Origin: Selaginella moellendorffii | Lineage: Eukaryota; Plantae; Lycopodiophyta | Direction: 5' to 3' | DNA: 64,000 nucleotides | Assembly: GCF_000143415.4 (NCBI RefSeq) | Contig: NW_003314281.1 | Location: 1,403,882 to 1,467,881, forward strand | Position numbers and translations under genes: made by a program | Part shown: positions 17,633 through 46,010 of the stretch, piece after piece | Numbering within the stretch: position 1 is the stretch's first letter | Layout of the letters: the number at the start of each line of letters is the position of its first letter | Notes under the pieces: model-generated | Told to the model about the DNA's origin: nothing | What the model saw: only the letters and a program-made list of their open reading frames with translations | Database searches by the model: none

Positions 17633-18407
17633 TCAGCCAGCGATGAGAGCGTACAGTGACAATTCCAGAGATTCCCTGGCCAAGTGCCTGATGTCCAGTG
17701 CCTGGATAGAGAAAAAGAAGTGAAGAAGAACCAAAAAGGAAACTCCAGATAATAGAAGAAAGATCTAGATTTCTTATACCTTGCTGCGAATGCAAAGACT
17801 AGCCATGGCTGGACGGTTCTTGGATCCCGGTCCCGGCGCCGATAATTCTCCTCGATCGATCGAGATGGTCGCGTCCTGAACGAGCAGCTGGTGCTGCCGC
17901 AAGATCCACAGCACGCTCAGCACCAAGCCCTGGCGCATACTGCAGCTCATGCTCAAGAACACGTCGGATTCGCAGATGTGGAGCCCCACGGGGCCGCCGC
18001 CACGATCCATCGCCGGCAGCGAGGAGCTTGCGATCATCAAATTCCTTGACTTACAGCGGCGTCGATCCTCGAGCACGGATTTCCTGAGCGCCAGCTCCTG
18101 GATTTGGCGCTGCAGTGACTGGATCAGCGCCATTGCCTCGGCGATGACCTCGCATCGATCCATCTGTACAGCAAAGAAGCAAGCAAAGCATTTAGCCCTT
18201 TCTGAGAATCCTAGCGATCGATCGAATGTGATGGATGGAGCGAGAGATTACTACCTTCCAGGAATGCGATTGGAGCGGTAGCAGCAGGCGCAGTCGATCA
18301 TACAGCTCCTGGACCTCCTTCCGCCGCTCGCGCTCCGACCAGATGTGATTGATCCGCTGCATGTAACTCCGGCTCCGCCCTCCCTGCGCCGGGATTAGAT
18401 GATCCAT
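17633..18407 (-). CDS. bHLH transcription factor with ACT-like C-terminus (bHLH1, copy A, intact), subfamily Ib-like
   Basis: Exons 18407-18255, 18163-17780 and 17701-17633 encode QRINHIWSERERRKEVQELYDRLRLLLP..K|MDRCEVIAEAMALIQSLQRQIQEL and end ALDIRHLARESLELSL. Confidence 0.88.
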
Positions 18408-18616
18408 GGCCGCGATCCTCCTCCTCTCGCGCGAAGTCTTCGAAATCTTTTGGAATAGTCAAGCACCAAAGGAATTATAAATATTCCGAACTTTCTTTCC
18501 AGGGAATCACACCGTACGCGCGGTGTTTATGATCTGTATAGAAGGCCAGACCCGTGGTACGATGCTTGCAATGCCCGTGAACGCCTGGGCGAAGTCCGTG
18601 GATCATGCCTTGGCTT

Positions 18617-19377
18617 CTACCTCATGAAGCACTGCCAGACGACGCAGCCAAGATCGCCATCCATCATAGGGCTTTGACCGTGTGATTGTAGCGATGCTGA
18701 TGATCCAGCACCAGACGTCGCCGCTGGAGGCGAGGCTGATTCTTCTGCTGGATTGCCTTGGAGGAGGTGAGTATCATGAAACTCTTCTCCTGCGGGGTCT
18801 GGAATCTCCAGCGTGGGAGGAGATGGAGATGGGTCGCTTCTTTCATGATCTTGAGAAACGGGTGAGTGGGCTACAAGTGCCTTGTTCCTGATGCGCGAGT
18901 TCCACTGGTTCTTCACATCGTTGTCTGTTCGTCCGGGAAGCTGGGAAGCAATGTAAGCCCACCTGTGATTGATATCAGTGATGAGGATAAAAAAGTGATG
19001 GTGCCGGATCAAACACCTGTTTCCAACAAGCCCATGGAGCTCGATGAGCTTTTGATTCTCCTCGTCGCTGAATTTCCCACGTTTAAGGTCCGGCCTCAAG
19101 TAGTTCACCCACCTTAGTCTACAGCTCTTCCCACTTCTTTGGAGCCCTGCAAGAAAGCAGCGAAATCGGTTCTATAGAAAACTTCGTGAGTGAGATCGTC
19201 AATCAAACCCGCAAGCTTGGGAACAGTGGTCCATACGTTTCCACACCCGTGCTGCAGTATGAAATTCAGCAATAGCTCGTCCTCTTCGGGCGACCACAGT
19301 CCCTTCCTCACGATCGAGCTCGAGCTCGTCGCGCATCCCAATTCATGATCGTCGGGTTGTTCTCTTCTCGAGACCAT
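18617..19377 (-). CDS. R2R3-MYB transcription factor (MYB1, copy A), 3 exons
   Basis: [67 protein letters not shown] with canonical intron positions. Confidence 0.92.
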
Positions 19378-20646
19378 GGATCGGTGAAGAACTTTGTGAC
19401 AAGGATTTCAAAGAAGATGAATTCATTTCAAGCTTGCTCTTTTGGTCATGGATCAAACTCATGGAAGGACAATATCAGTTGACACACATTTCTCACATTC
19501 CAACCACCATACACAAAAACATGGTAATGTTTTCATTTTTTTTCTTCTGTCTTCTTCTGTTTGTCTCAGCTTCATATTAAGAATCTCACAATAACTTTAT
19601 TTTCTACTGTCCCAAGGTACAAAGCTTGAAAGTCCTTTCCGCAAAGCTGGCCCTTTGACAGAGATTGCAAGATTGAGGCCAATGTTTTAGATCTATACTT
19701 CTGAGTACAGTGTTCACCTTTTTTGAGTCGTAATACCTTAAGATGAAAGTACTATATAAAAATAAATTCTAAAAATCCAGTTTCTAAAATCTTTTTTGTG
19801 ACAGAGAAATGATAAAAGAAATGCATTATGTCAAGTAACACATATTGGATTATAACTCATGCTTGAAAAAATTCACTTCAAAATATATACCATCTTAGCA
19901 GTATATGTCAAAACAATTAATATGCATCACAGAATGTTTTTCTTAGAAGAAACTCACTCAGCTTGAAATAATTTTAGTATTTTCTTTTGGAATTTTTTTA
20001 ACCAAGAATAGCATCATGTTTAGGTTCAGGTTTAGTAAATCAAGGAACGTTTAGGTTCAGGTTTAGGGGGTTTTAGCGATGAGTATAAGTATATTCTAGG
20101 CATCAAAAATCACCTGAGACAAGGAAATGGATTTTTTGATAAAAGGGAGAAGATGTGGAAATAGTGGTTATAGCAGCAAAGTATGGATATAGTTGCCTCC
20201 AATTTTCATGTTTGAACTTCATGTCATATATATATATATATGTGAGGGCCAAGTGTACGGCTACGATGCCGTATACTAATATTAGCGTAGTGGATTTTGG
20301 TAGCCGTCGGATTGGTTTCAATCCGGACCACTCACTCCTGTATATAAGCTAGGGTTTTTGGGTTAATTGAGATGCACATTTCTGTATTCCCTTTCCATAT
20401 TCCATACACTCACATTGGTGGAGGTGAGGGGCACCTTTGATTGTCCCTGGGGAGTGCTTGGATTTGGGATTTTGGTTTAGATCTAGCTTTTGCATTGTCT
20501 AGATCTAGTTTTTTCCATTTCCTTTCTTTTGTTCTTTCCTTTCAGGATTTTGGTTTAGATCTAGCTTTTTGCATTGTCTAGATCTACCATTTCTTTCCAG
20601 CTTTTGTCATTTCTCTTCTTTTGCTCTTTCTTTCTCATTCATTTTC

Positions 20647-21579
20647 ATGGCCGATCCGCAATCTCCTCCTTTGACTCTAGAGCAGCAGTTGGTTCAATTG
20701 CTTGATGCTATGCGCCTGCAATTGAACAACCAAACTCAGTTGATGGCGGCGTTCACGGCACATGGTACAACTCCTCCTGCTTTTGGTGCCAATCCTCGCG
20801 TTCGGCCGGAGTTCTTTCGTGGGAATCCTGGGGATGATGTGTACCATTGGTTCGATCACTTCACGGTGATTGCCACATATCATTCTTGGGATGATGCTCG
20901 ACGTTTGCGTGAGTTCCCCACATGTCTTCAAGGGACGGCATTGCAGTGGTACAATGGATTGAGCGCAGCTACTCGTGGCGATTGGAGTGTTCTTCCGGAC
21001 GTCTTCAAACGCGCCTTTGGACACGCCGACGATTGTGATGATGCCTTCCAACAATTGCATCGTCTTCGCCAAGGGCCATCTGAGTCGGTGATGCAATTTG
21101 GCGTTCGTTTCCGAAGTCTTTTGCTTCGTGCGGAGCCAAATATGTCAGAGCGGATCAAGCTAGGAATGCTGTGGCCAGCACTTCGTCAAGATCTTGTCGA
21201 ACTTGTGCATGCACTTGCTCCTGCCACTCTTGACGATGCTCTTCGCTTGGCACAACGTTATGAGACGTCGCCTCTTCCACATCTTGCTACACGTCCTTCA
21301 GCTCCACTTCCTATGAGTGATGGTCCTGTTCCCATGGAGGTTGATGCTGCTGCTACTCGAGTCCAAGGACAAGGGCGAGGACGTGGTCGTGGCCGTGACA
21401 TTCGTTGCTGGGCGTGTGATGAAGTTGGTCATACTTATCGGCGTTGTCGGCGCTTTCCGGATTGGCAACCTCCATTTCCTGGGTGGAGACCTTGGCGTCA
21501 GCAACGTCCCGTTGGTGCTGCTGCGGTGGAAGGTTTGGATACCGAGGTGCATTCGGGAAACGAGGAGTCGCGCGAGTAA
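20647..21579 (+). CDS. gag: Retrotransposon Gag
   Basis: Contains LRQGPSESV..F, GPVPMEVD and the CWACDEVGHTYRRC zinc knuckle. Confidence 0.88.
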   Translation: MADPQSPPLTLEQQLVQLLDAMRLQLNNQTQLMAAFTAHGTTPPAFGANPRVRPEFFRGNPGDDVYHWFDHFTVIATYHSWDDARRLREFPTCLQGTALQWYNGLSAATRGDWSVLPDVFKRAFGHADDCDDAFQQLHRLRQGPSESVMQFGVRFRSLLLRAEPNMSERIKLGMLWPALRQDLVELVHALAPATLDDALRLAQRYETSPLPHLATRPSAPLPMSDGPVPMEVDAAATRVQGQGRGRGRGRDIRCWACDEVGHTYRRCRRFPDWQPPFPGWRPWRQQRPVGAAAVEGLDTEVHSGNEESRE

Positions 21580-21618
21580 TGGAGGGACCTTGCGCGAATA
21601 AGTTAGTGACCCCTCCAT
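21555..21618 (+). promoter_or_regulatory. -1 programmed ribosomal frameshift signal (G GGA AAC plus H-type pseudoknot)
   Basis: Heptamer at 21555-21561, 6-nt spacer, stem 1 21568-21576/21589-21597 and stem 2 21579-21586/21611-21618. Confidence 0.85.
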
Positions 21619-23078
21619 CTTTCTTTCGGGAGTATCATCAAGGGGTTCACTCGGCACCGGTTCATCCAGTGTTTACTTTCCAAGCTCGTTTTTATAACAA
21701 GAGGTCTCCTATTCTTCTCTCCGTGTTGGTTGATATAGGTTCGAGTTTATCTTCTATTGCTCGACCTGTTGCCACACGTTGTCGTCTACACTTGCGTCGT
21801 GCGGCGGATCCAGTTTTCATTCTTTATGGCAACGGCCGTACACATGCATGTGCACGAGATGAGGCGGACCTGGTTGTGCGTGTGGGCGATCTCGAGCTTG
21901 AGTTGCAGTCGTTGCGGGTGGTGCCGAGTCAAGCTTTTGACCTCATTCTTGGTATGGATTGGTTGCAGCACAATCATGCCAAGTGTGACTTTGAGGCTTT
22001 TCCCCCTTGTCTCATACTTCCTTATGTTTCATCCATTCCTCTCACTTCCGTACCTCTTCGTCCCTCTACTTCTACCTCTGCTTCCATTACTTTTGTTCCC
22101 CCATTATTTCCTCTTGTGTTTCCATCTTGTTCTGCTCTTCCCTTTTCCGATCCCTCCGATGATCTTTGTGTTGCAGCTGTTGACCAGCTCATAAAGGAGT
22201 ATTCTGATCTCTTTGAATTTGACCTATCGTCTGGGGCCAAGATTGCCACACGTCATCCCATTCCAACCGGGGATGCTCGTCTAATCAAGGTTCCTGTTCG
22301 TCGTCGGTCACCCAAGGAGATCAAGATTTTACGTGCAAACGTCAAGGACATGTTGGAGAAGGGTGTTATTCGGAAGTCGCGGAGTCCTTGGGCATGTGAA
22401 CCTCATCTTGTGACGAAGCCTGATGAGAGTATTCGTTTCTGCATCGACTATCGTCCGTTAAATGAAGTGACGATCCCGGACGTGTACCCTCTTCCTCACA
22501 CTGCTGATCTCTTGGATCGTTTGGGGCGAAGTCGTTGGTTCACCAAGCTAGATCTTGCTTCTGGGTATTGGCAAGTACCGATGGCTGAAGACGATATTCC
22601 TAAGACTGCTTTTCGTACACCATTTGGTTTGTACGAGTTTTTGGTGATGCCGTTTGGTTTGAACAATGCTCCAGCAACTTTTCAGCGAATGATGGACGAG
22701 GTTCTTTGCGATATGCCGGAGGTGACGGCTGACTTCATTGATGATGTCTTGATCCACTCGGAGGGGACGTGGGAGGAGCATGTTCGTGATGTTTGTAAAG
22801 TGTTGGATCGGCTACGCGACGTTGGTTTAAAGCTAAAGCGGTCGAAGTGCGTGTTTGGGTCCAAGGACACAACTTATCTTGGGTACCGTATTTCTCGTGA
22901 GGGTTTGCAAGTTGATCCTGACAAACTTGTGGCTGTTCTAAAGTTCCCTATTCCGAAGTGTGTGAATGATGTGCAGCGCTTTTTGGGTAAGGTGCAGTAT
23001 CTCGGTCGTTTTGTGGATCATCTTTCCGATCGCACTTTACCATTGCAAGCATTGCTGAAGTCATCAAACCCATCTTGA
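21555..23078 (+). CDS. pol: Retrotransposon Pol (aspartic protease and RT) in the -1 frame relative to gag, truncated
   Basis: Contains LVDIGSS, DLILGMDWL, RFCIDYRPLN, KLDLASGYWQ, MPFGLNNAPATFQ and FIDDVLI. Confidence 0.9.
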   Translation, partial: GKRGVARVMEGPCANKLVTPPSFFREYHQGVHSAPVHPVFTFQARFYNKRSPILLSVLVDIGSSLSSIARPVATRCRLHLRRAADPVFILYGNGRTHACARDEADLVVRVGDLELELQSLRVVPSQAFDLILGMDWLQHNHAKCDFEAFPPCLILPYVSSIPLTSVPLRPSTSTSASITFVPPLFPLVFPSCSALPFSDPSDDLCVAAVDQLIKEYSDLFEFDLSSGAKIATRHPIPTGDARLIKVPVRRRSPKEIKILRANVKDMLEKGVIRKSRSPWACEPHLVTKPDESIRFCIDYRPLNEVTIPDVYPLPHTADLLDRLGRSRWFTKLDLASGYWQVPMAEDDIPKTAFRTPFGLYEFLVMPFGLNNAPATFQRMMDEVLCDMPEVTADFIDDVLIHSEGTWEEHVRDVCKVLDRLRDVGLKLKRSKCVFGSKDTTYLGYRISREGLQVDPDKLVAVLKFPIPKCVNDVQRFLGKVQYLGRFVDHLSDRTLPLQALLKSSNPS

Positions 23079-26000
23079 AGCCTTCGAATCCATGGCTTAA
23101 TCTTTTGAGCCTCACGAACTTCATCAAGAGAAGGTAAATATTGCTCTACGCCTTATGGACACTAAACATCAAGTACAGTAACTGCTAACGATATAAAATC
23201 CTCATCTAGAAAATCCACAGATGCTGGAACAACAAACTTATCAAAAACATGAGAAGAGAGTGGAGAAGGAATAGGAGCTCAAGAAAGGGCATTCGCATCA
23301 GCGATATAACTCCCTAGGCAATAAACAACATCAAAATCATATATCTGAAGCTTCAAAGCTTATCAAGTAGTATGACCAACTAGGTTCTTCCACTTCAATA
23401 ATGAAGTAACAGTAGTATAATCACCTTTAAGTAACGACCGAAAACTATGTAAAGTTTCTCGAAACACCAGATTGTTGCTAAACACTCCTTCTCTATCGTG
23501 GAGTAGTTAATCTCCGTTGGTTGTAATGTATGGTTTATATATGCAATAGGATGGCACTGACATGGCACACTCAAACTCTCTTGCATCAACACATCTCTAA
23601 GATGAATGTTAGAAGCATCCATGTGCAAAATAAAAGATCGAGTGTAGTCAGGATATGCCAAAACCAAAGGAGTTGTCAATAGCTCTTTGAGATCCATGAA
23701 CGCCCACTCATAATCCAGAGACTAAATGAAAGATGACATTGATCACTTCAGCAATACTCACAATAGTGCAGTGCACTCAGAAAGATGATCCACAAAATGA
23801 CCGAGATATTGCATCTTGCCCAAGAAGCGCTATACATCATTCATACACTTCGGAGTAGGGAATTTTAGAATAGCCACAAGTTTGTCAGGATCAACAAAAA
23901 ATATGGTACCCAAGATAAGTTGTGTCTTTGGACCCAAACACGCACTTTGACTGCTTCAGCTTTAAACCAACGTCGCGTAGCCGATCCAACACTTTACAAA
24001 CACTACAAACGTGCTCCTCCCATGTCCCCTCTGAGTGGATCAAGACATCATCAATGAAGTTAGCAGTCACCTTCGGCATATTGCAAAGAACCTCGTCCAT
24101 CATCTGCTGGAAAGTTGCTAAAGCATTGTTCAAACCAAATGGCATCACCAAAAACTCGTACAAACTAAATTGTGTACAAAAAGCAGTCTTAGAAATATCT
24201 TCTTTGGCCATCGGTACTTGCCAGTACTCAAAAGCAAGATCTAGCTTGGTGAACCAACAATTTTGCTCCAGACGATCCAAGAGATCAGTAGTGTGAGGAA
24301 GAGGGTACACATATGGGATTGTCACTTCGTTTAATGGACAATAGTCAATGTAGAAAAAAATACTTCTATCAGGCTTTGTCAGAAGATGAGGTTCACATGC
24401 CCAAGGACTCCACAACTTCTGAATAATACCCTTCTCCAACATTTCCTTGACGTTTGTATGTAAAATCTTGATCCCCTTGGGTGACCGATGACGAACAAGA
24501 ACCTTGATTGGATGAGCATCCCCGATTGGAATTCGATGATGTGTGGCAATCTTGGCCTTAGACGATAAGTCAAATTCAAAGAGATTAGAATACTCCTTCA
24601 CGAGCCAGTCAACCGCTGCAACACAAAGATCATTGGAGGGATCGAAAAAGGGAAAAGCAGAACAAGACGGAAATATAGGAGGAAATAGTGGGGGAATAAA
24701 AGTAATGGAAGCAAAAGTAGAAGTAGAGGGACGAAAAGGTACAGAAGTGAGAGGAATGAATGAAATATAAAGAAGTATGAGACAAAAGGGAAAAGCCTCA
24801 AAGTCATAATTGACATTATTGCGCTGCAACTAATCTATACCAAGAATAAGGTCAAAAGCTTGACTCGTCACCACCCACAATGACTACAATTCAAGCTCGA
24901 GATCCCCCACACACATAACTAGGTCTGCCTCATCCTGTGCACATGCATGTGTACGGCATTGCCATAAAGAATGAAAATTGGTTCTGCCACATGACGCAAG
25001 TGTAGACAGCAACGTGTAGTAACAGGTCGAGCAATAGAAGATAAACTCGAATCTGTATCAACCAACATGGAGAGAATAATAGGAGACCTCTTATTATAAA
25101 AACGAGCTTGGAAAGTAAACACTGGATGAACCGATGCGATGATACTCCCAAAAGAAAGATGGAGGGGTCACTGACTTATTTACACAAGGTCCCTCCATTA
25201 CTCATGTGACTCCTTATTTCCCAAATACATCTTGGTGTCTAGACCTTCCAATGCAATAGCACCAATGGGACATTGCTAACGCCAAGATCTCCACCTAGGA
25301 AATGGAGGTTGCCAATCCGGAAAACGCCAACAATGCCGACAATGCCAATAAGTATGACCAACTTCATCACACGCACAGCAGCAAATATCATGGCCATGGC
25401 CACTCGTCGCCTTTGTCCTTGGACGCAAGCAGCAGCAGCATCAACCTCCATTGGAACAGGACCATCACTCATAGGAAGTGGAGCTGAAGGATGTGCAGCG
25501 AGAAGTGGAAAAGACGACATCTCATAACGTTGTGCCAAGTGAAGAACATCGTCAAATGTGGTGGGAGCAAGTGCATGCACAAGTTTGACAAAATCTTGAT
25601 GAAGTGCTGGCCATAATTGTCGCAAATGTGACTTCAGGTATCGAAAGATACTTGTCGACCAGTCCTTATGGGCACTCTTTCCTTACTGCCATGACGGCAG
25701 GAGGTCAATACTGCTGGTTCCCTTTATTGGCCCCTCTTGTCCAAGTGTTAGTAAACTGGACTTAGCATCTGTACTTGGCCGGATGAGCATAAGGACGGAA
25801 TTCCTAAGTGTCTATTTGGCCAAGCATACTTGGCTCGGCTTTTTAGTTCTCTTTTGCTCTGTCTTGCACTGGTTTGGCAAAAACCCTCGCGTATTGAGAC
25901 TAGTCCCTCAATATTGCCAGATGATAGCTTATCGTGTTTGCCAAACACCCTCGCTATCAAGCCCTTTGTGTTGATCTCATTTCGGTCCCAAGTGCTATTT

Positions 26001-27624
26001 ATGGAAAGTGTCTAGATTCGCTCATTTGGCATGTCTATGGAATGTAGAGGTCGGCCTGAACACAATGGTGTTCGTCCCGTGTCCAAATTCTCAATTTAAG
26101 GCCATTCCATATTTAGTAAGTTTCGAACTTGTCCCAAAGACTAACTCCTGGTACGAAGGGTGGCTTGGGGTGAAAGCCNNNNNNNNNNNNNNNNNNNNNN
26201 NNNNNNNNNNNNNNNNNNNNNNNNNNNNNNNNNNNNNNNNNNNNNNNNNNNNNNNNNNNNNNNNNNNNNNNNNNNNNNTTGGGGGATAAATGGGGATAAA
26301 ATAGCCACTAAGGGCTTCTCATCAAGCAATTGCCCCTTTTTTAGTTGGCTTAAGGGGAGAAAGATAAAGTGTGTTACAAGGGGGTTGTGGGGATAGTAGG
26401 GATAGTGGTTGGAATGCATGTTAAACCACTTGAGACATTAGTTTGGCTCCTGCTGGGCTGTGTCGCTCCTTATTCTGCGTCCGGCTTGGGTCTAAGCCCA
26501 AGCTCCACATTGCTCTAGTCGGTGGGGTACCCTCCTCCTCACGTTAGGCCACCGGTATGCTAAAATGGTGTCAGACTCCGTCTGACACCATTTTGCGTGC
26601 AGGTGCTAGATACGGGGAGTTGGTGCTCGTGGGATTGTACCGGACCCTCGTTTCGTAACGCAACGGGCTTGGAGTTTGGCTCCAAATTCAGGTGCACTAC
26701 AATAACATTCCTAGCTTGATTCACTCCAACATGTTTGGCTCTGCACGAAGCAAAAAACTTCGGAAACAAATGCTAAATTGCATCACTGACTCAGATGGCC
26801 CTTGGCAAAGACAATGCAATTGTTGGAAGGCATCATCACAATTGTCGGCATATTCAAAGGCACGTTTGAAAACGTACAAGAGAACACTCTAATCCCCACA
26901 AGTGGCTGTGCTCAAACCATTGTACCACTGCAATGCCGTCCCTTGGAAACATATGGGAAACTCACACAAATGTCAAGTATCATCCCAAGAATGGTATGTG
27001 GCAATCATGGTGAAGTGATCGAACCAATGGTACACATTTCTAGGATTCCCACGAAAAAACTCCGGCTGAACGTGAGAATTGGCACCAAAAGTAGGAGGAG
27101 TTGTACCACATGCCGTGAATGTTGCCATCAACTAAGTTTAGTTGTTCAATTGCAAGCGCATAGCATCAAACAATTATACCAACTATTGCTCTAGAGTCAA
27201 AGGAGGAGATTGCTGATTTACCATGAAGATGAATGAAAAAGAAAGAGCAAAAGAAGAGAAATGACAAAAAGCTAGAAGGAAATGGTGGATTTAAACAATG
27301 CAAAAAGCTAAATCTAAACTAAAATCCTAAAAGGAAAGAACAAAATAAAAGAAAATGGAAAAAGCTAAATCTAGACGATGCAAAGATTATATTTAAACCA
27401 AAATTCTAAATCTAAACACTCCTTAGGGACAATCAAAGGTGCCCCTCACCTCCACCAATGTGAGTGCTTGGAATATGAATATAGAAAATATGCATATCAA
27501 TTAGCCTAAAAAACCCTAGTTTATATACAAGAGCAAGAGGTCTGGATTGAAACTAATCTAAGGTTACAAAAATCCCATTATGCTAATATTAGTATATGGC
27601 ATCGTAGCTGTACACTTGACCTTA

Positions 27625-27628: not shown

Positions 27629-27655
<27 letters not shown>

Positions 27656-28503: not shown

Positions 28504-28577
<74 letters not shown>

Positions 28578-28632: not shown

Positions 28633-28669
<37 letters not shown>

Positions 28670-35264: not shown

Positions 35265-38200
35265 CTCGGGGTGGTCACTCTTATATAACCATATATATCA
35301 TCTGTGTGTACGGATTAGGGTTATTTTGGGTGCAAACCATTACAAGCCTTAGGGTTGAGTTTAATTTGAAAAATTTCATACGTACAGGTAGGGGAGGAGG
35401 TGAAGCTCCTCTAGGGCTCTCTAGAGTAGCAAGCTGTAGAGGGCAATAAATTTCACATAGTAGGTATAGAGTGTGATGTTATTGTGTATGTAGAGGATGG
35501 GGATCAAAAGAAGCCTGTGGGTTTCATCAGGGTTCAGAAGGAGTGTTCTTATCATCAGCTCTGCAAAGCTATTATTTTAGACGAGATTGAGGGTCTTGTT
35601 AAGAGCGATTTTGTCTTCTTGGATGCCCTTTCCCTTGCAATGACATGTAAGAAAAAGAGATATCCATTTTTTGGAGCTGAAGTTCTGGTTCGCATGCTTA
35701 ATCTTACAGCAGTAGAACCAATTCAAGAGGGGCAATCTTCAGCAGCAACCAGTGAAGCTCATGAAGAAGATCCAATTGGATTTTTACCTAGTTTGAATTC
35801 CAAACTTGCTTCAGCTAGAGAAATACACAACTGGAAGAGATCATTCAAGCAGAATGAGAGAAAACTAAGAGCAAAAGGGAGGAAAGACAAGTTTGATTTG
35901 TTTTCATATGACCAAGATGGATGTGCTCACTTCAAAATCATGTGTCAGGAGTGTGGAATTGTTTATGGAGGAGGCCTGAAAGACACCTGTTACAATTTCG
36001 TTTCAAAACATTGCAGTGGAGCTAGGCATGAAGCAAACTACACAAAAGATCAGCTACAGCGGGAGAAAAGTGATTAGGAAAAAGCTGACACGGATAGTCC
36101 TATTGAGGGTGCTAATGAAGGTGCTAAACTTGCTAGAAGTGGAGAAGCTAATGAATGGAACCGTGGAAAGGTTTTGCGATGAAAACAATGTTTGCTTCAC
36201 TCTCTATGAACCAAGTGTGGGAAATTTTGAGAGGAGGAACAACATTCGGGTTTGTTGCAATCATTGTGAGAAGATGTTAATGCTTTTTCCTCTTGCCGGG
36301 AGTCTCCTGAACAATCTAATGGTTCACGTTTTTGGGAATAAGCACAAGAATGCTGGCCGAGAAAGAAGCATTGGAGGTCAGCCAACTAAAGTTGTAAACA
36401 CTAACAATAAACAAGGAAACCTCCTTAGCTATTTCACACAAGGTAAGAAATCGCATTCTAGTTTTTGTAAAGTTAATAATGTGTGTTGTTTAAATTTTTT
36501 CAGGAAAAGGAGTCTCATCAAGCAGTTCTTCTCAGAACTTCAAAGCATCTCCAAATGAGTCTTCAAGTAAGTAGCAATTCATATGCTTTACATGGTGTGA
36601 CTTCCTGTATAATATAATCTGTTGTAATTGATAGGAATTGAAAGACTTTGCTTTGGATACTGGCCAAATATGGCTTGAGTTCTATGAATGTTTGTCCTCT
36701 TCTCCAAGATGTAAAAGAGGGAGGTTGTTGGTTCTGTGATCCAAACTTCAAAGCAGCAGCAGATGGTGTTGTTGTCAACAGAACATTCAGATCAAACAGT
36801 GTCTAAGAGTGACAAACAATATATATGGATTCAAGAACAAGTAGTGCAAGTTTTGTATGACAATACTAGCTTGTAGTGACTTCAAAGGACGTGCTTTACG
36901 GGAAAGCAAAGTGACAATACCACAAGGACAAAGATTGAAGAGGCATGGAATGAGACTTGACTACATGACTACAACTGAGCACATAGATAGCAGTAGGCTA
37001 GTGCAAGCAGAGAATAGAAGGCTGGCATTGGAACTATTGACCACAAGATGCAGGATAGCAGCTCTTTCAGTTCATTGTCGGAGTTTAAAAGAAACTTTGA
37101 AGGAAAGCACCATTCGCAAGGATATCAGAAAATTCAGCTCTAACCTCAAACAAGCTTGGCAACAAGGCAAATTCAAGGGCAAGGAGACAGTTCTTCACGT
37201 GATGCAAGATCTGCTGTAGGGAATAACTAGGAAAAAACAAGGAATGAGGTTTTTTTTATTTATTCAAAGTTTTTTCCTTACACTCTTAATAGGTACCATG
37301 AAACCACAAAATGGATTTTGCGAGTAACAAAAATGTGGGGGGGGGGGGGGGGGGAGAGAGAGAGAGCAGGCTTAACAACTTCCTTCACTTGAACCTTGGA
37401 TTGACAAGTTTGTCGACAACAAAGCGTGACATGAGAACAAACTTTAGATACACAATAGGTTTGCAATCCAAGATATTTTTGAACCTTTCTAAGGTTTACA
37501 AGTTCAAGATGGAGAGTTTACAGCTCAAGCTAGGGAGTGTGCTTGTTTTGATTGCAAAAGACGAAACAGTTATTAAAAGGATGATCAAATGGATTGCTCG
37601 TGATGATGCTTTGCTCGGGTTTTGTGGAAAGAAGGGGGAGGGTCACAAGTGTGTGAACGGTTTTGTCGTGAAGGTTGGGAATGGAGAAGCAGGTTATGAA
37701 CAGATCACTCAGGCTTTTCTGGACAACGAGAAAGCTCACTATGCACAAGTGTTGATGGTTAATCCATTGCACAGACAGTTGCTGTGCTTGGTTCTCTCTA
37801 TTCAGCTTACTTGCAATCAGTTTACAACTTCAAATGTTCGACAACAATGGAACTCGATCCATCAAATATGGGGACAGCACCTTCAGAATGTTGTTGGCCC
37901 ACTGATTGGCCATTCATCAGATGAAGATCAAAGAAGGTGTAAACTAATGCTTGAAGACATGAGTCTGGGTGATACAACAACAGGAACTTACTTTGTACCT
38001 TGGTCAGGGTGGCTATTCTCTGGAAAGTGGATTCAACAGGGAACCTTTTGATACATGATCAAGACTATGTGCATAATGGGAAGAAGCTGATCAATCCATT
38101 GCATAGTGCAATAAGACAATTGTTTCTGAAAGTTTTCGAAAACTTCCCAAATGTCATTCAAATGCACAAACTCATCTCCCATGGTAAACACAGACTGCAA

Positions 38201-39841
38201 CTTGGGGATGTTAGGTGCTTTGATAGACAAAAGTGGGGTGCTGCTCAGCGACTTTGTAGCAGGCTAGTGCAAGTTTGTCTTTCGATTATGCAAGAAACAA
38301 CATATAGAAGACCTTCACGTACGCTGGGAACCGAAACTTATCTTGCTGTGGTGGCATTATATATTGATATCTTTTTGCACCCGTACTTGAGCCTTGGAGA
38401 GCGAGTGAGAGCTGCATCAACGGTGTCCTTCTTCTTTTGTTTATAGAGGTTGTGGATTCTGAAGGAAAGCAAGTGGAACCTGAAACACAACTTCATCAGC
38501 AAGGAAACCTTTTTGGACATTCAATTATCATGTCACTTTGTTGTCCTTCTAATCAGGTATGTTTCATATATATTTTTCTTTTGTTAATTTTGCTTTTGAG
38601 ATAGATATTTCCGGGATCACCATTCACATTTGCCTGTCCCAATTAATAGAACTTGTTCTGACATTTGCGAGAACTTTTTCTCCAAAATAGGAGGAATGAT
38701 CGGGAATGAAAGGTGTTATGATGGAGTTGACGTTGTTCATAGTGCAACTAGTATGAACATGCTAGCAGAATGCGAGGCAGTAGGTACATTGCTTTTTTCT
38801 AAAGCTCACAGGAAACAGGAAAATATTTGGGAAAAGATAGAGCATGATGGTAAGAGAGTAGTAGCGGACTTAGGGGATTACAATTTGGTGGAGATAGATG
38901 CTTTGATAGTTAATGAGCTGATTCAGGGTAAAGCCAAAGCACAAGAACTTCTTCATGGCTTTGGCATATCTGGAAGAGATTGGTGGGATAAACCTGAAGA
39001 TTTTGAGGATTTTCACAAGGTTTCAGAAAATTCCGGAGAGCATGATATAGTCAATCAGTTTGAAGAGGAACATATAGTAGGAGAAGAAGCTACTGAAGTA
39101 GCAAGTGAACTGAGGCATACTTTTGATGCTGTTTTGGATCATATTGAAAATTATGAGTCATTAAAAATGGAAGCAATAGTTTTGGTTGACAAGAAGAAAA
39201 TCTATAAATTGACCATTGTTTCTCAGCTAAATGAAAATCCATTTCTCTCCAAAGACCGGCTCACATGGGTGAGTTTGTTTGGTATGGTGGTCGAATTCTT
39301 TCCATGAGGAAAAAAGTGAACAATACTTGGACAGACACAAGGGAAGTGATTGAATTAGCCAATCTTCCAATTGATTCTGCTGATTTTCAAATGAACCTAT
39401 GCTACTATAGGGAATGTGATGCTCCTGAAGCTAATGATGAAGGGAATTCATGGTATAGATACAACGTTCTTGATAATATGCTAGTGGAACTAACAAGCTT
39501 GATTGCTTTGGCATCATTATCATATCATCCAGAAGTCGAGAGATATTTGCTTCCACAACATGATAGGGAAGTTTTTGATAATTTCATCAAAGATAAAAGC
39601 AAGAATATCAATTGTCGTAGAAGGTGAAATAAATTTTTTTATTAATGGAAATATATATATGCTTTATGCAAAAATAACCAGAATATTCCACATATATATA
39701 AGAATTAAGGGTTTATTTAAGATTTGAAAAAATGGGTATGGGGCAAATTATGAACAACAAAAAAAGTATACTAGGCCCCCTAATTCTAAACTTCCAGAAC
39801 TCAAATGATATATAATGCTTATAAAGAGTGACCACCCCGAA
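35265..39841 (+). mobile_element. 4.6-kb TIR DNA transposon with a degenerate P-superfamily-like transposase
   Basis: TIRs YTCGGGGTGGTCACTCTT (imperfect to about 40 bp), 8-bp TSD GTTAGTTG/GTCAGTTG and an empty site at about 17615. ORF fragments contain DET, GHSSD, QDYVHNGKKLIN and SDICENFFS. Confidence 0.85.
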
Positions 39842-39854: not shown

Positions 39855-40582
39855 TCAGCCAGCAATAAGAGCGTAAAGTGACAATTCCAGAGATTCCCTG
39901 GCCAAGTTCCTGATGTCCAGTGCCTGGATAGAGAAAATGAAGAGAAGAAGAACCAAAAAGGAAACTCCAGATAATGCTGCGAATGCAAAGGCTAGCCATG
40001 GCTGGACGGTTCTTGGATCCCGGTCAATCGATCGAGATGGTCGCGTCCTGGACGAGCAGCTGGTGCTGCCGCAAGATCCACAGCACGCTCAGCAGCAATC
40101 CCTCGCGCATACTGCAGCTCATGCTCAAGAACTCGGATTCACAGATGTGGAGCCCCACGGGGCCGCCGCCACGATCCATCGCCGGCAGTGAGGAGCTTGC
40201 GATCATCAAATTCCTTGATTTACAGCAGCGTCGATCCTCGAGCATGGATTTCCTGAGCGCCAGCTCCTGGATTTGGCGCTGCAGTGACTGGATCAGCGCC
40301 ATTGCCTCGGCGATGACCTCGCATCGATCCATCTGCAAAGCAAAGAAGCAAAGCATTTAGCCCTTTGTTTGCTTGGCTGAGAATCCTAGCGATCGATCGA
40401 ATGTGATGGATGGAGCGAGAGATTACTACCTTCCAAGATTGCGATTGGAGCGGTAGCAGCACGCGCAGTCGATCATACAGCTCCTGGACCTCCTTCTGCC
40501 GCTCGCGCTCCGACCAGATGTGATTGATCCACTGCATGTAACTCCGGCTCCGCCCTCCCTGCGCCGGGATTAGATGATCCAT
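39855..40582 (-). pseudogene. bHLH1 copy B, probably pseudogenised
   Basis: Basic region changes ERERR>ERERQ and QRINH>QWINH. A deletion creates a stop after ISID (40024), and the intron-2 donor is deleted. Confidence 0.78.
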
Positions 40583-40786
40583 GGTCGCGATCCTCCTGCT
40601 CTCGCGCGAAATCTTCGAAATCTTTTGGAATAGTCAGATCCAAAGGAATTATAAATATTCCGAACTTCTTTCCAGGGAATCACACCGTACGCACGGTGTT
40701 TATGATCTGTATGGAAGCCCAGACTTGTGGTACGATGCTTGCAATGCCCGTGATCTGGGCGAAGTCCGTGGATCATGCCTTGGCTT

Positions 40787-41546
40787 CTACCTCATGAAGA
40801 ACTGCCAGACGACGCAGCCAAGATCTCCATCCATCATAGGGCTTTGACCGTCTGATTGTAGCGATGCTGATGATCCAGCACTAGACTTCGCCGCTGGAGA
40901 CGAGGCTGGTTCTTCTGCTGGATCGCTTTGGAGGAGGTGAGTATCGCGAAACTCTTCTCCTGCGGGGTCTGGAATCTCCGGCGTGGGAGGAGATGGAGGT
41001 GGGTCGCTTCTTTCATGATCTTGAGAAACGGGTGAGTGGGCTACAAGTGCCTTGTTCCTGATGCGCGAGTTCCACTGGTTCTTCACATCGTTGTCTGTTC
41101 GTCCGGGAAGCTGGGAAGCAATGTAAGCCCACCTGTGATTGATATCAGTGACGAGGATAAAAAAGTGATGGTGCCGGATCAAACACCTGTTTCCAACAAG
41201 CCCATGGAGCTCGATGAGCTTTTGATTCTCCTCGTCGCTGAATTTCCCACGTTTAAGGTCCGGCCTCAAGTAGTTCATCCACCTTAGTCTACAGCTCTTC
41301 CCACTTCTTTGGAGCCCTGCAAGAAAGCAGCGAAATCGGTCCTATAGAAAACTTCGTGAGTGAGATCGTCAATCAAACCCGCAAGCTTGGGAACAGTGGT
41401 CCATACGTTTCCACACCCGTGCTGCAGTATGAAATTTAGCAATAGCTCGTCCTCTTTGGGCGACCACAGTCCCTTCCTCACGATCGAGCTTGAGCTCGTC
41501 ACGCCTCCCAATTCATGATCGTCGGGTTGTTCTCTTCTTGAGACCA
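40787..41546 (-). CDS. R2R3-MYB (MYB1, copy B), 3 exons
   Basis: Near-identical to 18617-19377 with frame and splice sites intact. Confidence 0.9.
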
Positions 41547-42855
41547 TGGATCGGTGAAGAACTTTGTGACAAGGATTTTTCAAAGAAGATGAATTCATTT
41601 CAAGCTTGCTCTTTTGGTCATGGATCAAACTCATGGAAGGACAATATCAGTTGACACACATTTCTCACATTCCAACCACCATACACAAAAACACGGTAAT
41701 GTTTTCTTTTTTTTTCTTCTTTCTTCTTCTTTTTGTCTCAGCTTCATATTAAGAATCTGACAATAACTTTATTTTCTACTGTCCCAAGGTACAAAGCTTG
41801 AAAGTCCTTTCCGCAAGCTGGCCCTTTGACAGAGATTGCAAGATTGAGGCCAATGGTTTAGATCTATAGTTCTGAGTACAGTGTTTCACCTTTTTTGAGT
41901 CGTAATGACATTACTATATAAAAATAAATTCTAAAAATCCAGTTTCTAAAATCTTTTTTGTGACAGAGAAATGATAAAAGAAATGCGTTCTGTCAAGTAA
42001 CATATTGGATTATAACTCATGCTTGAAAAAATTCACTTCAAAATATATACAATCTTAGGAGTATATGTCAAAACAATTAATATGCATCACAGAATGTTTT
42101 TCTTAGAAGAAAATCACTCAGCTTGAGATAATTTTAGTATTTTCTTTTGGAATTTTTTTAACCAAGAATAGCATCATTTCAGGAACGTTTAGGTTCAGGT
42201 TTAGTAATGGGGTTTTAGCGGTTAAATTAGTATAAGTATATTCTAGGCATAAAAAATCACCATTTTTTTATAAAAGGGAGAAGATGTGGAAGTGGTGGTC
42301 ATAGCAGCAAAGTATTGATATAGTTTCCTCCAATTTTCATGCTTGAACTTCACACCCAACACCAGCCAGAAGTTGATAAGGTGATAGAATTTCCTCTCTC
42401 CAATCATTTTCCAAAACTAGAAGTGATAAATGGTCAAAGACTAAAAGAGAGAGTCCTAAAGAATGAGATTCATTCCCCACTAATGTGTCCATGCTTTCTC
42501 ATAGAGGTGGTGACAATCCTATTAGATATGGACTAACTTTGGTTTACAGGATTTTGATACACTATGAAATTCTTTCATTTCTTTGCATCCCCCACATTAA
42601 TATAATTAGTTTTAATTAATAATATTGTTTTTTTAATTGCAAACCGGCTGTGCAGCAATATAATTTTTCATTTTTATTGCCTTTAAATTTCAATTACCAG
42701 TTTTTTTTCTTCGCATTAGAGATTAGCTTTAAAAGTAAAGATAAAGCAATAAAAGATGGGTCTTATTAACTATTTCTGTACCTTCACTTAAAATGAACTT
42801 GATAATAGTATATATTTAATTCAGTTACTTTAAAAATTAATGTATTCAATGGATC

Positions 42856-43858: not shown

Positions 43859-44541
43859 TTAAAACTTGTTCACAAAACTTTTTAGCGATGACTCCAAAGA
43901 CTCCTTGGCGAAGTGATCGATGTCCAAGGCCTGCAAATCCACAGACAAAATCCTAAGAAAATCAATGGAGAGATGGAGAAACCTTGGCACGGATGCAGAT
44001 GCATGCGACGCGCGAAGCATCATCGACGGAGACGGACGCGTCCTGAACAATCAGCTGGTGTTGGCGCAGAATCCACAGCACACTCAGCAAGAGCCTGGCC
44101 TGCATCCTGCAGCTCATGTTGACGAACACATCCGACTTGCATATGTGCAGCCCCACGCTAGCACTCGATCTCGCTGCTGCCGCCATCGCCATCGCATTCC
44201 ACTTGGGCTTGGAAGGATCCATGGCGGCGCTCTTGCGGTGCTCGAGCAGCATGGATCTCGTCGCCGACAGCTCCTGGACTTGATTCTTGAGCGATTGGAT
44301 GAGCTCCATCGTCTCCTGCACCACTCCGCATCGATCCATCTTTCGTGCAGCGCAAACAATCTTTGAGTGATCAAGCAAAGTAACAAGTGTGGATTGATCA
44401 GGATACCTTTGAGGCTTCCGTTGTTGGTAGCAGCGACCTCAGCCGATCATACAGCCCTTGCAGCTCTTTCCTTCGCTCCCTCTCCGACCATATGTGATTG
44501 ATCCGCTGCGCGTACGTCCGGGTCTTTCCTTGCGCAAGCAT
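43859..44541 (-). CDS. bHLH with ACT-like domain (bHLH2, copy B), 3 exons
   Basis: Same structure as copy A. An upstream in-frame ATG at 44664 is an alternative start. Confidence 0.86.
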
Positions 44542-44997
44542 CGCCGGGCCCAACCCAATGCGCGGATTGATGCTAGCAGCATTCAAGGGGCAAACTCCAT
44601 GATCCAGAAACACGGGAAGAAACTGACTCAAGCTTGAGCCCTCGCGCTTGACAGGCTTCACCATTGATCGTAAACTTACACTCGAATGTGGTCGTCTAGA
44701 AGAGAAACTCTCGCCCTCGAGAACTTACACTTGCTCTTACAATCAAAAGGACTTTCTCCCCTCCACCAATCTTCTCGAGCGCTCCCCCACCACCTTTCGG
44801 TGGTGTAGTTATGAAACGATCGGCGTGGATGTTGGATACTACGCAACATCTACGCCGAGCATACATTTGCTTTTGCCAGCCAGCACAAGACACGGTTATG
44901 ATTTTAACGATACACAGATAATCTCTTTAATGCCAAACAATAATCGAACCACTTTATTTTGATGAAATAGATTGGCAAGAAAGAGACGCTCTTTAAT

Positions 44998-45033
44998 ATC
45001 TCCTCTCTCTCTCTCTCTCTCGTATAGATGCCA

Positions 45034-45094
<61 letters not shown>
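44998..45094. repeat. (CT)n/(GA)n microsatellite directly after the MYB2 stop codon
   Basis: Directly visible. Confidence 0.95.
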
Positions 45095-45095
<1 letters not shown>

Positions 45096-45096
<1 letters not shown>

Positions 45097-46010
45097 TAGA
45101 TGCTACTGCTGCTACCGCTGACACTGTGGCAGAAGCTCAAATCCAGGCACTCGTCTTGCAGCTGGAGCTCAACCAGCGCTCGCAGAGGACATGCCTCGCC
45201 GCAGAGCAAGCAGTCGCCGCTAGAAGTGGTGCTTGCCACCGCCAGGTGATGATGATCCAAAAGTTGGACACCAGTGCTGCTGATGCTACTGCCATTGCTG
45301 CTGATGCTGCTGCTGCTGCTCTCGTATGCCATACCGCTGCAGGAGCTTTGCCAGACAATGCAACCCAGATCGCCATCCATCATCAATCGCTGTGCTTCCT
45401 CACCTCCCTCTAAACTCTTCTCACTGTCTTGGCGAGGGAGTGCTGTTTCACTTGTGATCGAAGAACTTCTTCCACAGCTGCTAGAGCTCCTCCCCTTGGC
45501 CTTGAATCTGACGCGGGAGTTCCAATGGTTCTTGACATCGTTATCCGTTCTCCCAGGAAGTTGAGTAGCAATGTAAGCCCATCTACACAGCGAAGGGAGA
45601 GATGTCGATCCGAAGCCAAACACTCGAGCAAAAGTAAAGTACCTGTTTCCAACCAATTCATGCAGTCGACAGAGAGTTTCCTCCTCCTGCTCGCTGAATT
45701 TTCCGTGCTTCAACTCCGGTCTCAAGTAGTTCATCCATCTCAGCCTGCAACTCTTGCCAGTTCTTTGCAGGCCTGGAACTCGAAAAGCCACACAACAACA
45801 GTCGATCATCAGAAACTTGCAAATTCCAACTCCGGAAAGCTTACCTGCAAGCTTGGGCACGGAGCTCCAGACTTGATATCCATACTGCAGGATGTGCTTC
45901 CTCAAAAGCTCGTCCTCTTCAGGAGACCAGAGTCCCCGCCGCAGTTTGCTGGACACTACAGCATCGTCTCCCTCGTACTCTTGTTTCGAGGCTGTCTCAA
46001 CTGAACTCAT
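45096..46010 (-). CDS. R2R3-MYB (MYB2, copy B, intact), 3 exons
   Basis: [71 protein letters not shown]. Confidence 0.92.

What the first reader, a model, noticed from the sequence alone, without database searches (positions are those of the whole stretch)
17633..46010. Repeated MYB>bHLH gene pairs: a physically linked, non-canonical MYB-bHLH regulatory cluster
Seen: four times an R2R3-MYB lies directly upstream of a bHLH-ACT gene on the same strand (MYB1 stop to bHLH1 ATG about 205-210 bp; MYB2 to bHLH2 about 380-550 bp), while successive pairs are kilobases apart. MYB1/MYB2 and bHLH1/bHLH2 are diverged paralogues, so the pair was the unit of an older duplication, and the 4-gene block duplicated again recently. 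Established: MBW complexes use IIIf bHLHs with an N-terminal MYB-interaction region and MYBs carrying [DE]Lx2[RK]x3Lx6Lx3R, and those genes are normally unlinked. These bHLHs are short Ib-like proteins (HIWSERERRK, as in ZHOUPI/bHLH95) with no such region. The MYBs lack the motif and both have the unusual GNRWAYIA. Inference: a co-inherited, co-expressed two-factor module, either dimer partners or a cascade.
Basis: partly seen in the sequence, partly recalled or inferred. Interest (0 to 1): 0.8.

Follow-up and report, generated by a model that had tools for sequence, protein, structure and literature searches.

The report
Tandem MYB-bHLH gene array in spikemoss
In the spikemoss Selaginella moellendorffii an adjacent MYB gene and small bHLH gene were copied together several times into a decaying tandem array, but nothing found here shows that the two factors work as a pair.

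Summary
The window is Selaginella moellendorffii. All the genes lie on the minus strand.

**What is there**
- There are two diverged MYB>bHLH pairs. A unit of about 6 kb holding both pairs was then duplicated in tandem.
- The duplication junction lies inside exon 2 of MYB2, so the second MYB2 was born truncated. A retroelement later split it.
- Only two of the four adjacencies join two intact genes: MYB2-II>bHLH2-II and MYB1-I>bHLH1-I.
- bHLH1-II has a premature stop, has lost a splice donor and carries R13>Q in its basic region. bHLH2-I has a 1-nt frameshift.
- The other haplotype carries three units.
- None of the four assembly gaps touches a coding exon, and their flanks are collinear.

- MYB1/MYB2 and bHLH1/bHLH2 are sister paralogues.
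- The MYBs lack the bHLH-interaction motif.
- The bHLHs are short bHLH plus ACT-like proteins with a ZOU-like basic region.

**What does not**
- RNA data show separately spliced transcripts, and bHLH1 has its own TATA-like box and 5' end.
- No read-through was seen, and depths within a pair are unequal.
- The nearest bHLH relatives in Selaginella and moss have no MYB neighbour.
- Physical or regulatory coupling remains untested.

The scan had already noted this array on other pieces of the same genome (s1-341424, followed up; s1-375055; s1-398977).

The parts
45096..46010 (-). MYB2-II, an intact R2R3-MYB of 260 aa. Exons are 46010-45845, 45772-45643 (the canonical 130 nt) and 45582-45096.
   Evidence: The model is identical to P0004, XP_024533622.1. 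Both introns appear as joints in RNA data. Pfam Myb_DNA-binding hits twice, 112 bits.
43859..44664 (-). bHLH2-II, an intact bHLH plus ACT-like protein of 228 aa. Exons are 44664-44407, 44339-43983 and 43930-43859.
   Evidence: It differs by 1 aa from P0001. Introns of 67 and 52 nt appear as joints. Pfam HLH scores 34 bits.
44665..45095 (-). The 431-nt spacer between MYB2-II and bHLH2-II, containing (GA)n repeats.
   Evidence: Sequence read. Depth is 0 at 44820-45019, but reads are skipped at the repeat 44992-45126.
40787..41547 (-). MYB1-II, an intact R2R3-MYB of 214 aa. Exons are 41547-41379, 41316-41187 and 41132-40787.
   Evidence: The model is identical to P0010. Both introns appear as joints, and a contig carrying the copy-II/A letters is present.
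40583..40786 (-). The 204-nt spacer between MYB1-II and bHLH1-II. It holds a TATA-like box (TATTTATAA) at 40656-40648.
   Evidence: The bHLH1 contigs have 5' ends at 40584-40622. One ends in adapter letters at 40622, and depth is about 0 at 40620-40819.
39855..40582 (-). bHLH1-II, a degenerate copy. It has R>W and R13>Q in the basic region and a 3-nt deletion. A 21-nt deletion creates TGA at 40026-40024. A 29-nt deletion removes the intron-2 donor.
   Evidence: Alignment to bHLH1-I. The RNA contigs laid on this copy carry the letters of the terminal unit (h1_I / h2_C) at the sites that tell it from copy II, including the ACG insertion and the 21-nt stretch. They therefore come from the intact terminal copy, not from this one.
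35265..39841 (.). A DNA transposon inserted just 3' of bHLH1-II. It has 16-nt terminal inverted repeats and an 8-bp target duplication (CAACTGAC / CAACTAAC).
Evidence: It is absent from the other haplotype, where L001 runs straight from about 39842 to 35258.
35150..35264 (-). The tandem-duplication junction. The 3' flank of bHLH1 is joined at about 35171 to MYB2 exon 2, about 7 nt into the exon.
   Evidence: Three-way comparison with 17640-17490 and 45860-45730. The same junction is present in the other haplotype at L001:14721-15079 and L009:12211-12569.
34900..35171 (-). MYB2-I pseudogene, 5' piece. It holds exon 2 with a 9-nt deletion, intron 2 and the start of exon 3. There is no exon 1 and no promoter.
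31583..34899 (.). A retroelement fragment with a reverse-transcriptase ORF, inserted into exon 3 of MYB2-I.
   Evidence: Self-comparison and the RT-like ORF at 32134-32388. It is shared with units B and C of the other haplotype.
31199..31582 (-). MYB2-I pseudogene, 3' piece: the C-terminal part of the last exon, with its stop at 31201-31199.
30133..30947 (-). bHLH2-I. A 1-nt insertion at about 30905 shifts the frame after codon 13, with a stop at 30857-30855. The bHLH and ACT parts are otherwise intact. An in-frame ATG lies just before the basic region.
   Evidence: The NCBI model P0002 starts at exon 2 and runs into retroelement gag sequence.
20227..28840 (.). Two inverted gypsy-type retroelement fragments (gag, protease, RT) plus a TA/CA-rich microsatellite. 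Together they separate bHLH2-I from MYB1-I. The stretch includes the gaps at 26179-26278 and 28059-28320.
   Evidence: The same insertion sits in units B and C of the other haplotype.
18617..19377 (-). MYB1-I, an intact R2R3-MYB of 214 aa with 15 aa differences from MYB1-II. Exons are 19377-19209, 19146-19017 and 18962-18617.
   Evidence: Against MYB1-II, dS is 0.035, dN 0.031 and omega 0.87.
17633..18407 (-). bHLH1-I, an intact bHLH plus ACT-like protein of 201 aa. This is the expressed bHLH1 copy. Exons are 18407-18255, 18163-17780 and 17701-17633.
   Evidence: The model is identical to P0003. The RNA contigs carry its diagnostic letters. The AF2 model has pLDDT 85.6 and an ACT-like C-terminal fold.

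Best explanation
This is a lineage-specific tandem array that evolves by birth and death of copies.

Proposed history:
1. One founding adjacency placed an R2R3-MYB directly upstream of a short, ZOU-like bHLH plus ACT-like gene.
2. That pair was duplicated once, long ago, giving MYB1-bHLH1 and MYB2-bHLH2.
3. A unit of about 6 kb was then duplicated in tandem. It runs from inside MYB2 exon 2 to about 100 nt past bHLH1. This haplotype has two units and the other has three.
4. Since then transposons have invaded the array and redundant copies have been decaying.

Each gene is its own transcription unit. The repeated MYB>bHLH adjacency is a by-product of how segments are copied. It is not shown to be maintained by selection. 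Whether the MYB and the bHLH act together is open. The default partner for a ZOU-like bHLH with an ACT-like domain is another bHLH, of the ICE1/SCRM type.
For: **Shown**
- The organism and the gene models are established.
- The duplication structure comes from the self-comparison.
- The junction is exact, lies inside MYB2 exon 2, and is shared by both haplotypes.
- The other haplotype carries three units. Window copy II is allelic to its unit A (0.9-2.0% divergence). The MYB1-bHLH1 part of copy I is allelic to its unit C (1.7%).
- The lesions in MYB2-I, bHLH2-I and bHLH1-II, and in bHLH1 of units A and B, are documented.
- Recent copies show relaxed constraint, with omega up to about 0.9-1.5. 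The old paralogues show omega 0.17-0.33.
- Seven introns are confirmed as RNA joints: all six of MYB2, bHLH2 and MYB1, and intron 1 of bHLH1. The stranded run places the RNA on the minus strand. bHLH1 contigs end 5' 26-34 nt after a TATA-like box, and there is no coverage across the MYB1-bHLH1 spacer.
- bHLH1 and bHLH2 are sister genes (99/96). MYB1 and MYB2 are sisters by identity and by private motifs.
- The nearest bHLH relatives are Selaginella P0127 and Physcomitrium P0130 and P0276. None has a MYB within 10 kb.
- Short intergenic distances are general in this region. The upstream methyltransferase gene ends about 340 nt before MYB2. A convergent epimerase gene lies about 280 nt after bHLH1.

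**Inferred**
- The order of events.
- That the adjacency itself is neutral.
Against: - All four genes of the old duplication have been kept under purifying selection at dS above 1. For dosage-sensitive partners this is what gene-balance arguments would predict.
- In each pair type at least one intact MYB>bHLH adjacency survives in each haplotype.
- With about 15 2R-MYB genes (PMC4603784), about 100 bHLH genes (PMC2839125) and roughly 22,000 genes (my recollection), a founding MYB>bHLH adjacency is expected only about 0.03-0.13 times by chance. That estimate does not correct for the many other family pairs that would also have caught the eye.
- Expression was sampled in only four runs. Three of them are assembled contigs, whose depths are unreliable.
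- Orthologues in other lycophytes could not be found, so conservation of the adjacency within the group is untested.
Confidence: 0.75

Rival explanations
1. The MYB and the adjacent bHLH plus ACT-like protein form a real two-factor module. They would be either a non-MBW heterocomplex or a MYB-to-bHLH cascade. Adjacency would be kept because copying both together preserves their stoichiometry or shared regulation.
For: - The pair was duplicated as a unit and all four old genes were retained with omega 0.17-0.33.
- Divergence of the two families is similar.
- The spacers are short, 204-431 nt.
- All four gene types are transcribed in runs X1 and X2.
- MYB-bHLH contacts outside the MBW type are known in plants (my knowledge, not tested here).
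Against: - The transcripts are separate, and bHLH1 has its own TATA-like box and 5' end.
- In the raw-read run MYB2 is covered and bHLH2 is not.
- MYB1 copies stay intact and expressed next to broken bHLH1 copies.
- The MYBs carry no bHLH-interaction motif and the bHLHs carry no MYB-interaction region.
- No MYB-core, AC or G-box site lies in the MYB1-bHLH1 spacer.
- The nearest bHLH relatives have no MYB neighbour.
Confidence: 0.17
2. The apparent tandem repeat is an assembly artefact. Two haplotypes or collapsed repeats would have been joined across the N gaps.
For: - Four gaps lie inside the span.
- The public assembly holds both haplotypes as separate scaffolds.
- The copies differ by only 2-8%.
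Against: - The duplication junction at about 35171 is read through without any gap. It recurs on the other haplotype scaffold, twice.
- Allelic relations (II = A, I = C) are closer than paralogous ones.
- Copy-specific lesions and transposon insertions distinguish the units.
- RNA contigs carry letters specific to different copies.
Confidence: 0.03
3. Each MYB and its downstream bHLH are co-transcribed as one read-through or bicistronic RNA.
For: The MYB1-bHLH1 spacer is very short (204-209 nt) and has no AATAAA.
Against: - No contig or read bridges 40620-40819. The bHLH1 contigs stop at 40584-40622.
- A TATA-like box sits 26-34 nt upstream of that end.
- The earlier follow-up s1-341424 reached the same view on other DNA. 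That is a lead, not independent proof.
Confidence: 0.03

Closest known systems
MBW complexes (R2R3-MYB with a IIIf bHLH such as maize R, GL3 or TT8, plus a WD40 protein)
   Same: A MYB and a bHLH with a C-terminal ACT-like domain. The predicted ACT-like fold of bHLH1 matches the solved maize R and GL3 ACT-like domains best (TM 0.83-0.84 by target, rmsd about 1.9).
   Different: The bHLHs have only 11-50 residues before the basic region, so they have no MYB-interaction region. The MYBs lack the R3 motif [DE]Lx2[RK]x3Lx6Lx3R. MBW genes are not reported as adjacent (my knowledge).
bHLH subfamily Ib(1), ZHOUPI/bHLH95-like, which heterodimerises with ICE1/SCRM
   Same: The basic region NHIWSER[EQ]RRK is shared with Selaginella P0127 and with moss 'bHLH95-like' proteins, which are the best profile hits. 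Both have the bHLH plus ACT-like architecture. ZOU is placed in Ib(1) in PMC2839125.
   Different: bHLH1 and bHLH2 sit on a long private branch. Their helix 1 and loop are diverged, and they lack the roughly 150-aa N-terminal part. The tree does not resolve their link to the moss clade (17/80). No orthologue outside S. moellendorffii scored better than E 1e-17.
Homotypic transcription-factor gene clusters made by tandem duplication, such as the BIS bHLH cluster of Catharanthus (PMC7833464)
   Same: Transcription-factor genes are amplified locally by tandem duplication, and the copies diverge or decay.
   Different: Here the repeated unit is heterotypic, with a MYB and a bHLH alternating. No link to a pathway or trait is known.
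Earlier scan finding s1-341424 (same genome, another piece; followed up)
   Same: It describes a tandem array of MYB-bHLH pairs in S. moellendorffii, transcribed as separate genes and not as an operon.
   Different: This report adds the junction inside MYB2 exon 2, the pseudogene lesions, the difference of 2 versus 3 units between haplotypes, the identity of the expressed copies, and the lack of MYB neighbours at the nearest bHLH relatives.

Membership tests
R2R3-MYB | Two adjacent Myb repeats (R2 and R3) with regularly spaced tryptophans | tested here: met
   Pfam PF00249 matches two stretches, at 112 and 109 bits against a cut-off of 24.4, in P0004 and P0010.
R2R3-MYB | Canonical gene structure: three exons with a conserved 130-nt exon 2 (the size is from my knowledge) | tested here: met
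   Exon 2 is 130 nt in MYB1-I, MYB1-II and MYB2-II. All introns are GT..AG and appear as RNA joints.
MBW-type (bHLH-binding) R2R3-MYB | The R3 motif [DE]Lx2[RK]x3Lx6Lx3R | tested here: not met
   A regular-expression search found it in none of the three intact MYB models.
bHLH | A basic region followed by helix-loop-helix, with His5-Glu9-Arg13 for G-box binders | tested here: met
   PF00010 scores 34 bits against a cut-off of 20.7 in P0001 and P0003. H-x3-E-x3-R is present in the intact copies. Arg13 is replaced by Gln in bHLH1-II.
IIIf bHLH (MBW partner) | An N-terminal MYB-interaction region of about 200 residues (from my knowledge) | tested here: not met
   The basic region starts near residue 12 in bHLH1 and near residue 50 in bHLH2. 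No N-terminal domain hit was found.
Plant bHLH with an ACT-like domain | A C-terminal beta-beta-alpha-beta-beta-alpha ACT-like fold | tested here: met
   Pfam PF22754 scores only 20-22 bits, below its cut-off of 27.6. The AF2 model (pLDDT 85.6) has the order E-E-H-E-E-H. Its best PDB matches are the maize R and GL3 ACT-like domains, at E 7e-5 to 1e-3 and TM 0.78-0.84 by target.
bHLH subfamily Ib(1) (ZOU-like) | Groups with bHLH95/ZOU-type proteins in a phylogeny | tested here: inconclusive
   The basic-region signature is shared and these proteins are the best profile hits. The joining branch has support of only 17/80. No Arabidopsis ZOU sequence was available for the test.
Tandem segmental duplication | Head-to-tail copies with a definable junction and collinear content | tested here: met
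   Shown by the self-comparison. The junction lies at about 35171 (equivalent to about 45765). It is found in both haplotypes.
Operon-like or bicistronic gene pair | A single transcript spans both coding regions | tested here: not met
   No contig or read crosses 40620-40819, and bHLH1 has its own 5' ends. For MYB2-bHLH2 the spacer repeat was skipped by the tool, so the test there is inconclusive.
Co-expressed regulatory module | Correlated expression of the cognate MYB and bHLH | tested here: inconclusive
   All four gene types are present in runs X1 and X2. Raw-read run X14 shows MYB2 at 2-6x and bHLH2 at 0. The depths in X5 are confounded by contigs merged with neighbouring genes. Only four runs were examined.

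The most novel reading that the evidence does not exclude
A short ZOU-like bHLH plus ACT-like protein and a private R2R3-MYB clade form a previously unknown MYB-bHLH partnership that does not use the MBW interface. On this reading, their genes stay adjacent and are co-amplified because joint duplication preserves their dosage balance.
Probability: 0.12. Interest if true: 0.6.

Novelty: new member of a known kind. Interest (0 to 1): 0.3.

Why it matters
If the two factors did act together, this would be a rare plant case of heterotypic transcription-factor partners inherited as one block. It would offer a natural test of dosage-balance ideas.

As it stands, the locus is a clean, datable example of tandem segmental duplication in a compact lycophyte genome. 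It has an exact breakpoint, a gene born truncated, transposon invasion, decay of redundant copies, and a copy-number difference between the two haplotypes.

It also corrects one RefSeq model. P0002 (XP_024533700.1) fuses bHLH exons with retroelement gag sequence.

Tried and rejected
- **NCBIfam scan of the four proteins.** No hits. The library is prokaryote-oriented, so this is uninformative.
- **Word-based homology search with bHLH exon 2 and with the full-length protein.** Only Selaginella proteins, one unnamed transcript and two Prunus ORG2-like proteins came back.
- **Profile search of 1.84 billion representative proteins.** No orthologue outside S. moellendorffii scored better than E 1e-17, so adjacency in other lycophytes could not be tested.
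- **P0124, the closest protein from an unnamed organism.** It sits on mRNA-like contigs of about 2.2 kb with no neighbours.
- **Sphagnum P0131.** It could not be located on a contig.
- **Motif scan of spacers and upstream regions for G-box, E-box, AC elements, MYB core, TATA and AATAAA.** Nothing supported a cascade, and the power of the scan is low.
- **Literature searches for a described MYB-bHLH adjacency in Selaginella or elsewhere.** None was found.
- **Assembly artefact and read-through transcription.** Both were considered and rejected, as set out under the rival explanations.
- **Handling of spliced models.** Exons were joined only inside scripts. The identical database proteins P0001, P0003, P0004 and P0010 were used as references after that.
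- **AlphaFold-Multimer.** Not available, so no complex was predicted.

Full report
**Identity and layout**

The window is Selaginella moellendorffii. Proteins translated from it are identical or nearly identical to RefSeq proteins of that species.

All MYB and bHLH genes lie on the minus strand. Pair 1 is MYB1>bHLH1 and pair 2 is MYB2>bHLH2.

A self-comparison shows two head-to-tail units:
- Copy II, at high coordinates, is MYB2-II (46010-45096), bHLH2-II (44664-43859), MYB1-II (41547-40787) and bHLH1-II (40582-39855).
- Copy I is a MYB2 remnant (35171-34900 plus 31582-31199), bHLH2-I (30947-30133), MYB1-I (19377-18617) and bHLH1-I (18407-17633).

The exon models that I read from the sequence all have GT..AG introns. 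They translate to P0004, P0010 and P0003 exactly, and to P0001 with one difference.

**Gaps**

None of the four N runs inside the span touches a coding exon.
- 31002-31101 is intergenic and replaces a (GA)n stretch.
- 29935-30065 begins 67 nt after the bHLH2-I stop. Its length fits the 134-136 nt found in copy II and in the other haplotype.
- 28059-28320 lies in a microsatellite.
- 26179-26278 lies in retroelement sequence.

For three of the gaps the flanks are collinear with copy II and/or with the second haplotype. For the microsatellite gap (28059-28320) the matches on the two sides overlap in repeat sequence, so nothing can be said there.

Two limits follow. The MYB2-I to bHLH2-I distance cannot be measured. 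And because three gaps lie between bHLH2-I and MYB1-I, the number of units in this haplotype is not fully secure.

**How the array arose**

The junction between the units can be read through without a gap. The 3' flank of bHLH1 is joined at about 35171 to sequence that starts about 7 nt into MYB2 exon 2. MYB2-I was therefore born without promoter, exon 1 and intron 1.

The same junction occurs on the other haplotype scaffold, GL377627.1, once in L001 and once in L009. That scaffold carries three units over about 57 kb:
- unit A, with a full MYB2;
- units B and C, each starting with the truncated MYB2.

Window copy II is allelic to unit A (0.9-2.0% divergence). The MYB1-bHLH1 part of copy I is allelic to unit C (1.7%). 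Unit B has no counterpart in this window.

Retroelement insertions in the truncated MYB2, and between bHLH2 and MYB1, are shared by copy I, B and C. They therefore predate the B/C split. A DNA transposon at 35265-39841, with 8-bp target duplication, is private to this haplotype.

**Decay of copies**

| Copy | State |
|---|---|
| bHLH1-II | R>W and R13>Q in the basic region; a 3-nt deletion; a 21-nt deletion creating TGA at 40026-40024; a 29-nt deletion removing the intron-2 donor |
| bHLH1, other haplotype | unit A has an R>W change in the basic region; unit B has many changes and has lost its stop; only the terminal unit C is intact |
| bHLH2-I | 1-nt insertion that shifts the frame after codon 13; the three bHLH2 copies of the other haplotype are intact |
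| MYB1 | all five copies intact |

Between recent copies dS is 0.02-0.10 and omega reaches 0.9-1.5, on small counts. The old paralogues show omega 0.17-0.33.

**The older duplication**

- bHLH1 and bHLH2 form a 99/96-supported clade on a long stem. They share both intron positions.
- The R2R3 domains of MYB1 and MYB2 are 74% identical to each other, against 64-69% to the best angiosperm hits.
- Among the 120 best hits, only these two carry GNRWAYIA and the C-terminal MMDGDLGC[IV]VWQ motif.
- dN is 0.39-0.41 for the MYBs and 0.375 for the bHLHs. dS is saturated or nearly so, at about 2 and 1.1.

**What the proteins are**

The MYBs are ordinary R2R3-MYBs. They lack the bHLH-interaction motif.

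The bHLHs have a canonical H-E-R basic region and HLH (34 bits). A predicted structure with pLDDT 85.6 has a C-terminal E-E-H-E-E-H domain. Its best PDB matches are the maize R and GL3 ACT-like domains. There is no room for an N-terminal MYB-interaction region.

Their nearest relatives are a third Selaginella bHLH (P0127, 'ORG3-like', E 2.7e-30) and moss 'bHLH95-like' proteins. These share the NHIWSER[EQ]RRK basic region. ZOU/bHLH95 is placed in subfamily Ib(1) in PMC2839125. The tree does not resolve this link, so 'Ib(1)-like' remains a lead.

**Expression**

Reads or contigs from four runs were laid on 40020-46015.
- Seven introns appear as joints: all six of MYB2, bHLH2 and MYB1, and intron 1 of bHLH1.
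- The stranded raw-read run places all RNA on the minus strand.
- The bHLH1 contigs carry the letters of the intact terminal copy at every site that tells it from copy II. This includes the 3-nt and 21-nt stretches that copy II lacks. The broken copy was not detected.
- Both MYB1 types are represented.
- The MYB2 reads of run X14 carry exactly the letters of the other haplotype's allele.
- bHLH1 contigs end 5' at 40584-40622. One ends in adapter letters. That end is 26-34 nt downstream of a TATA-like box.
- The bin 40620-40819 is essentially empty, so no MYB1-bHLH1 read-through was seen.
- The (GA)n spacer of pair 2 was skipped by the tool.
- In X14, MYB2 has depth 2-6, MYB1 and bHLH1 have depth below 1, and bHLH2 has depth 0.
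- The depths in X5 are not usable. The MYB2 contig runs 1143 nt further upstream and the bHLH1 contig runs 1931 nt further downstream, probably into the neighbouring genes, though I did not map those extensions.

**Is the adjacency special?**

- The four adjacencies descend from one founding event.
- Short intergenic distances are the local norm: about 340 nt before MYB2 and about 280 nt after bHLH1.
- The nearest bHLH relatives, Selaginella P0127 and Physcomitrium P0130 and P0276, have no MYB gene and no MYB-like sequence within 10 kb.
- With about 15 2R-MYB genes (PMC4603784), about 100 bHLH genes (PMC2839125) and about 22,000 genes (my recollection), one MYB>bHLH adjacency is expected 0.03-0.13 times by chance. 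That is before allowing for the many family pairs that would have looked equally interesting.
- In favour of a functional link stands only the long co-retention of both old pairs under purifying selection.

**Verdict**

The structural observation is real but overstated. The evolutionary reading (pair duplication, then block duplication) is right, with a corrected unit boundary. The functional reading (co-expressed partners or a cascade) has no support here and some weak evidence against it.

The scan had already noted this array on other pieces of the genome. I found no paper that describes it.

Noticed in passing
window 25239-25625 and 30133-30661: RefSeq model P0002 (XP_024533700.1, 'uncharacterized protein LOC112347280') is a chimera. 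It joins exons 2-3 of the frameshifted bHLH2-I to a retroelement gag fragment about 5 kb away.
   Followed up: partly
L001, L009, L008 (GL377627.1, about 222-280 kb): The other haplotype carries three units of the array where this window has two, so copy number differs between haplotypes. Alternatively, a unit is hidden in this window's gaps.
   Followed up: partly
window 35265-39841: The DNA transposon has 16-nt terminal inverted repeats (CTCGGGGTGGTCACTC type) and an 8-bp target duplication (CAACTGAC / CAACTAAC). The empty site is visible at 17620-17613 and in the other haplotype.
   Followed up: partly
window 46011-47200 and 15700-17632: In run X5, the contig that holds MYB2 continues 1143 nt upstream, where a Methyltransf_21 gene lies on the same strand. 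The contig that holds bHLH1 continues 1931 nt downstream, where a convergent epimerase/3-beta-HSD-like gene lies. I did not map the extensions. If they do reach those genes, transcripts of neighbouring genes overlap or are merged in this compact region.
   Followed up: no
window 27560-28840 and 42850-43055: A long TA/CA-rich microsatellite lies downstream of bHLH2 in both units. It is expanded in copy I, where it holds an assembly gap.
   Followed up: no
window 1-1679 vs 5292-7056; 1738-3230 vs 12974-13832: Further dispersed repeats at 88-91% identity lie outside the finding. The region is near a composite Helitron noted earlier (s1-421049).
   Followed up: no
L003-L006 (Logan contigs of runs SRR27216358, SRR27216420, SRR27216394, SRR27216422): An unnamed organism expresses a 355-aa bHLH (P0124) that falls inside the moss bHLH95-like clade in the tree. 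The species was not identified.
   Followed up: no
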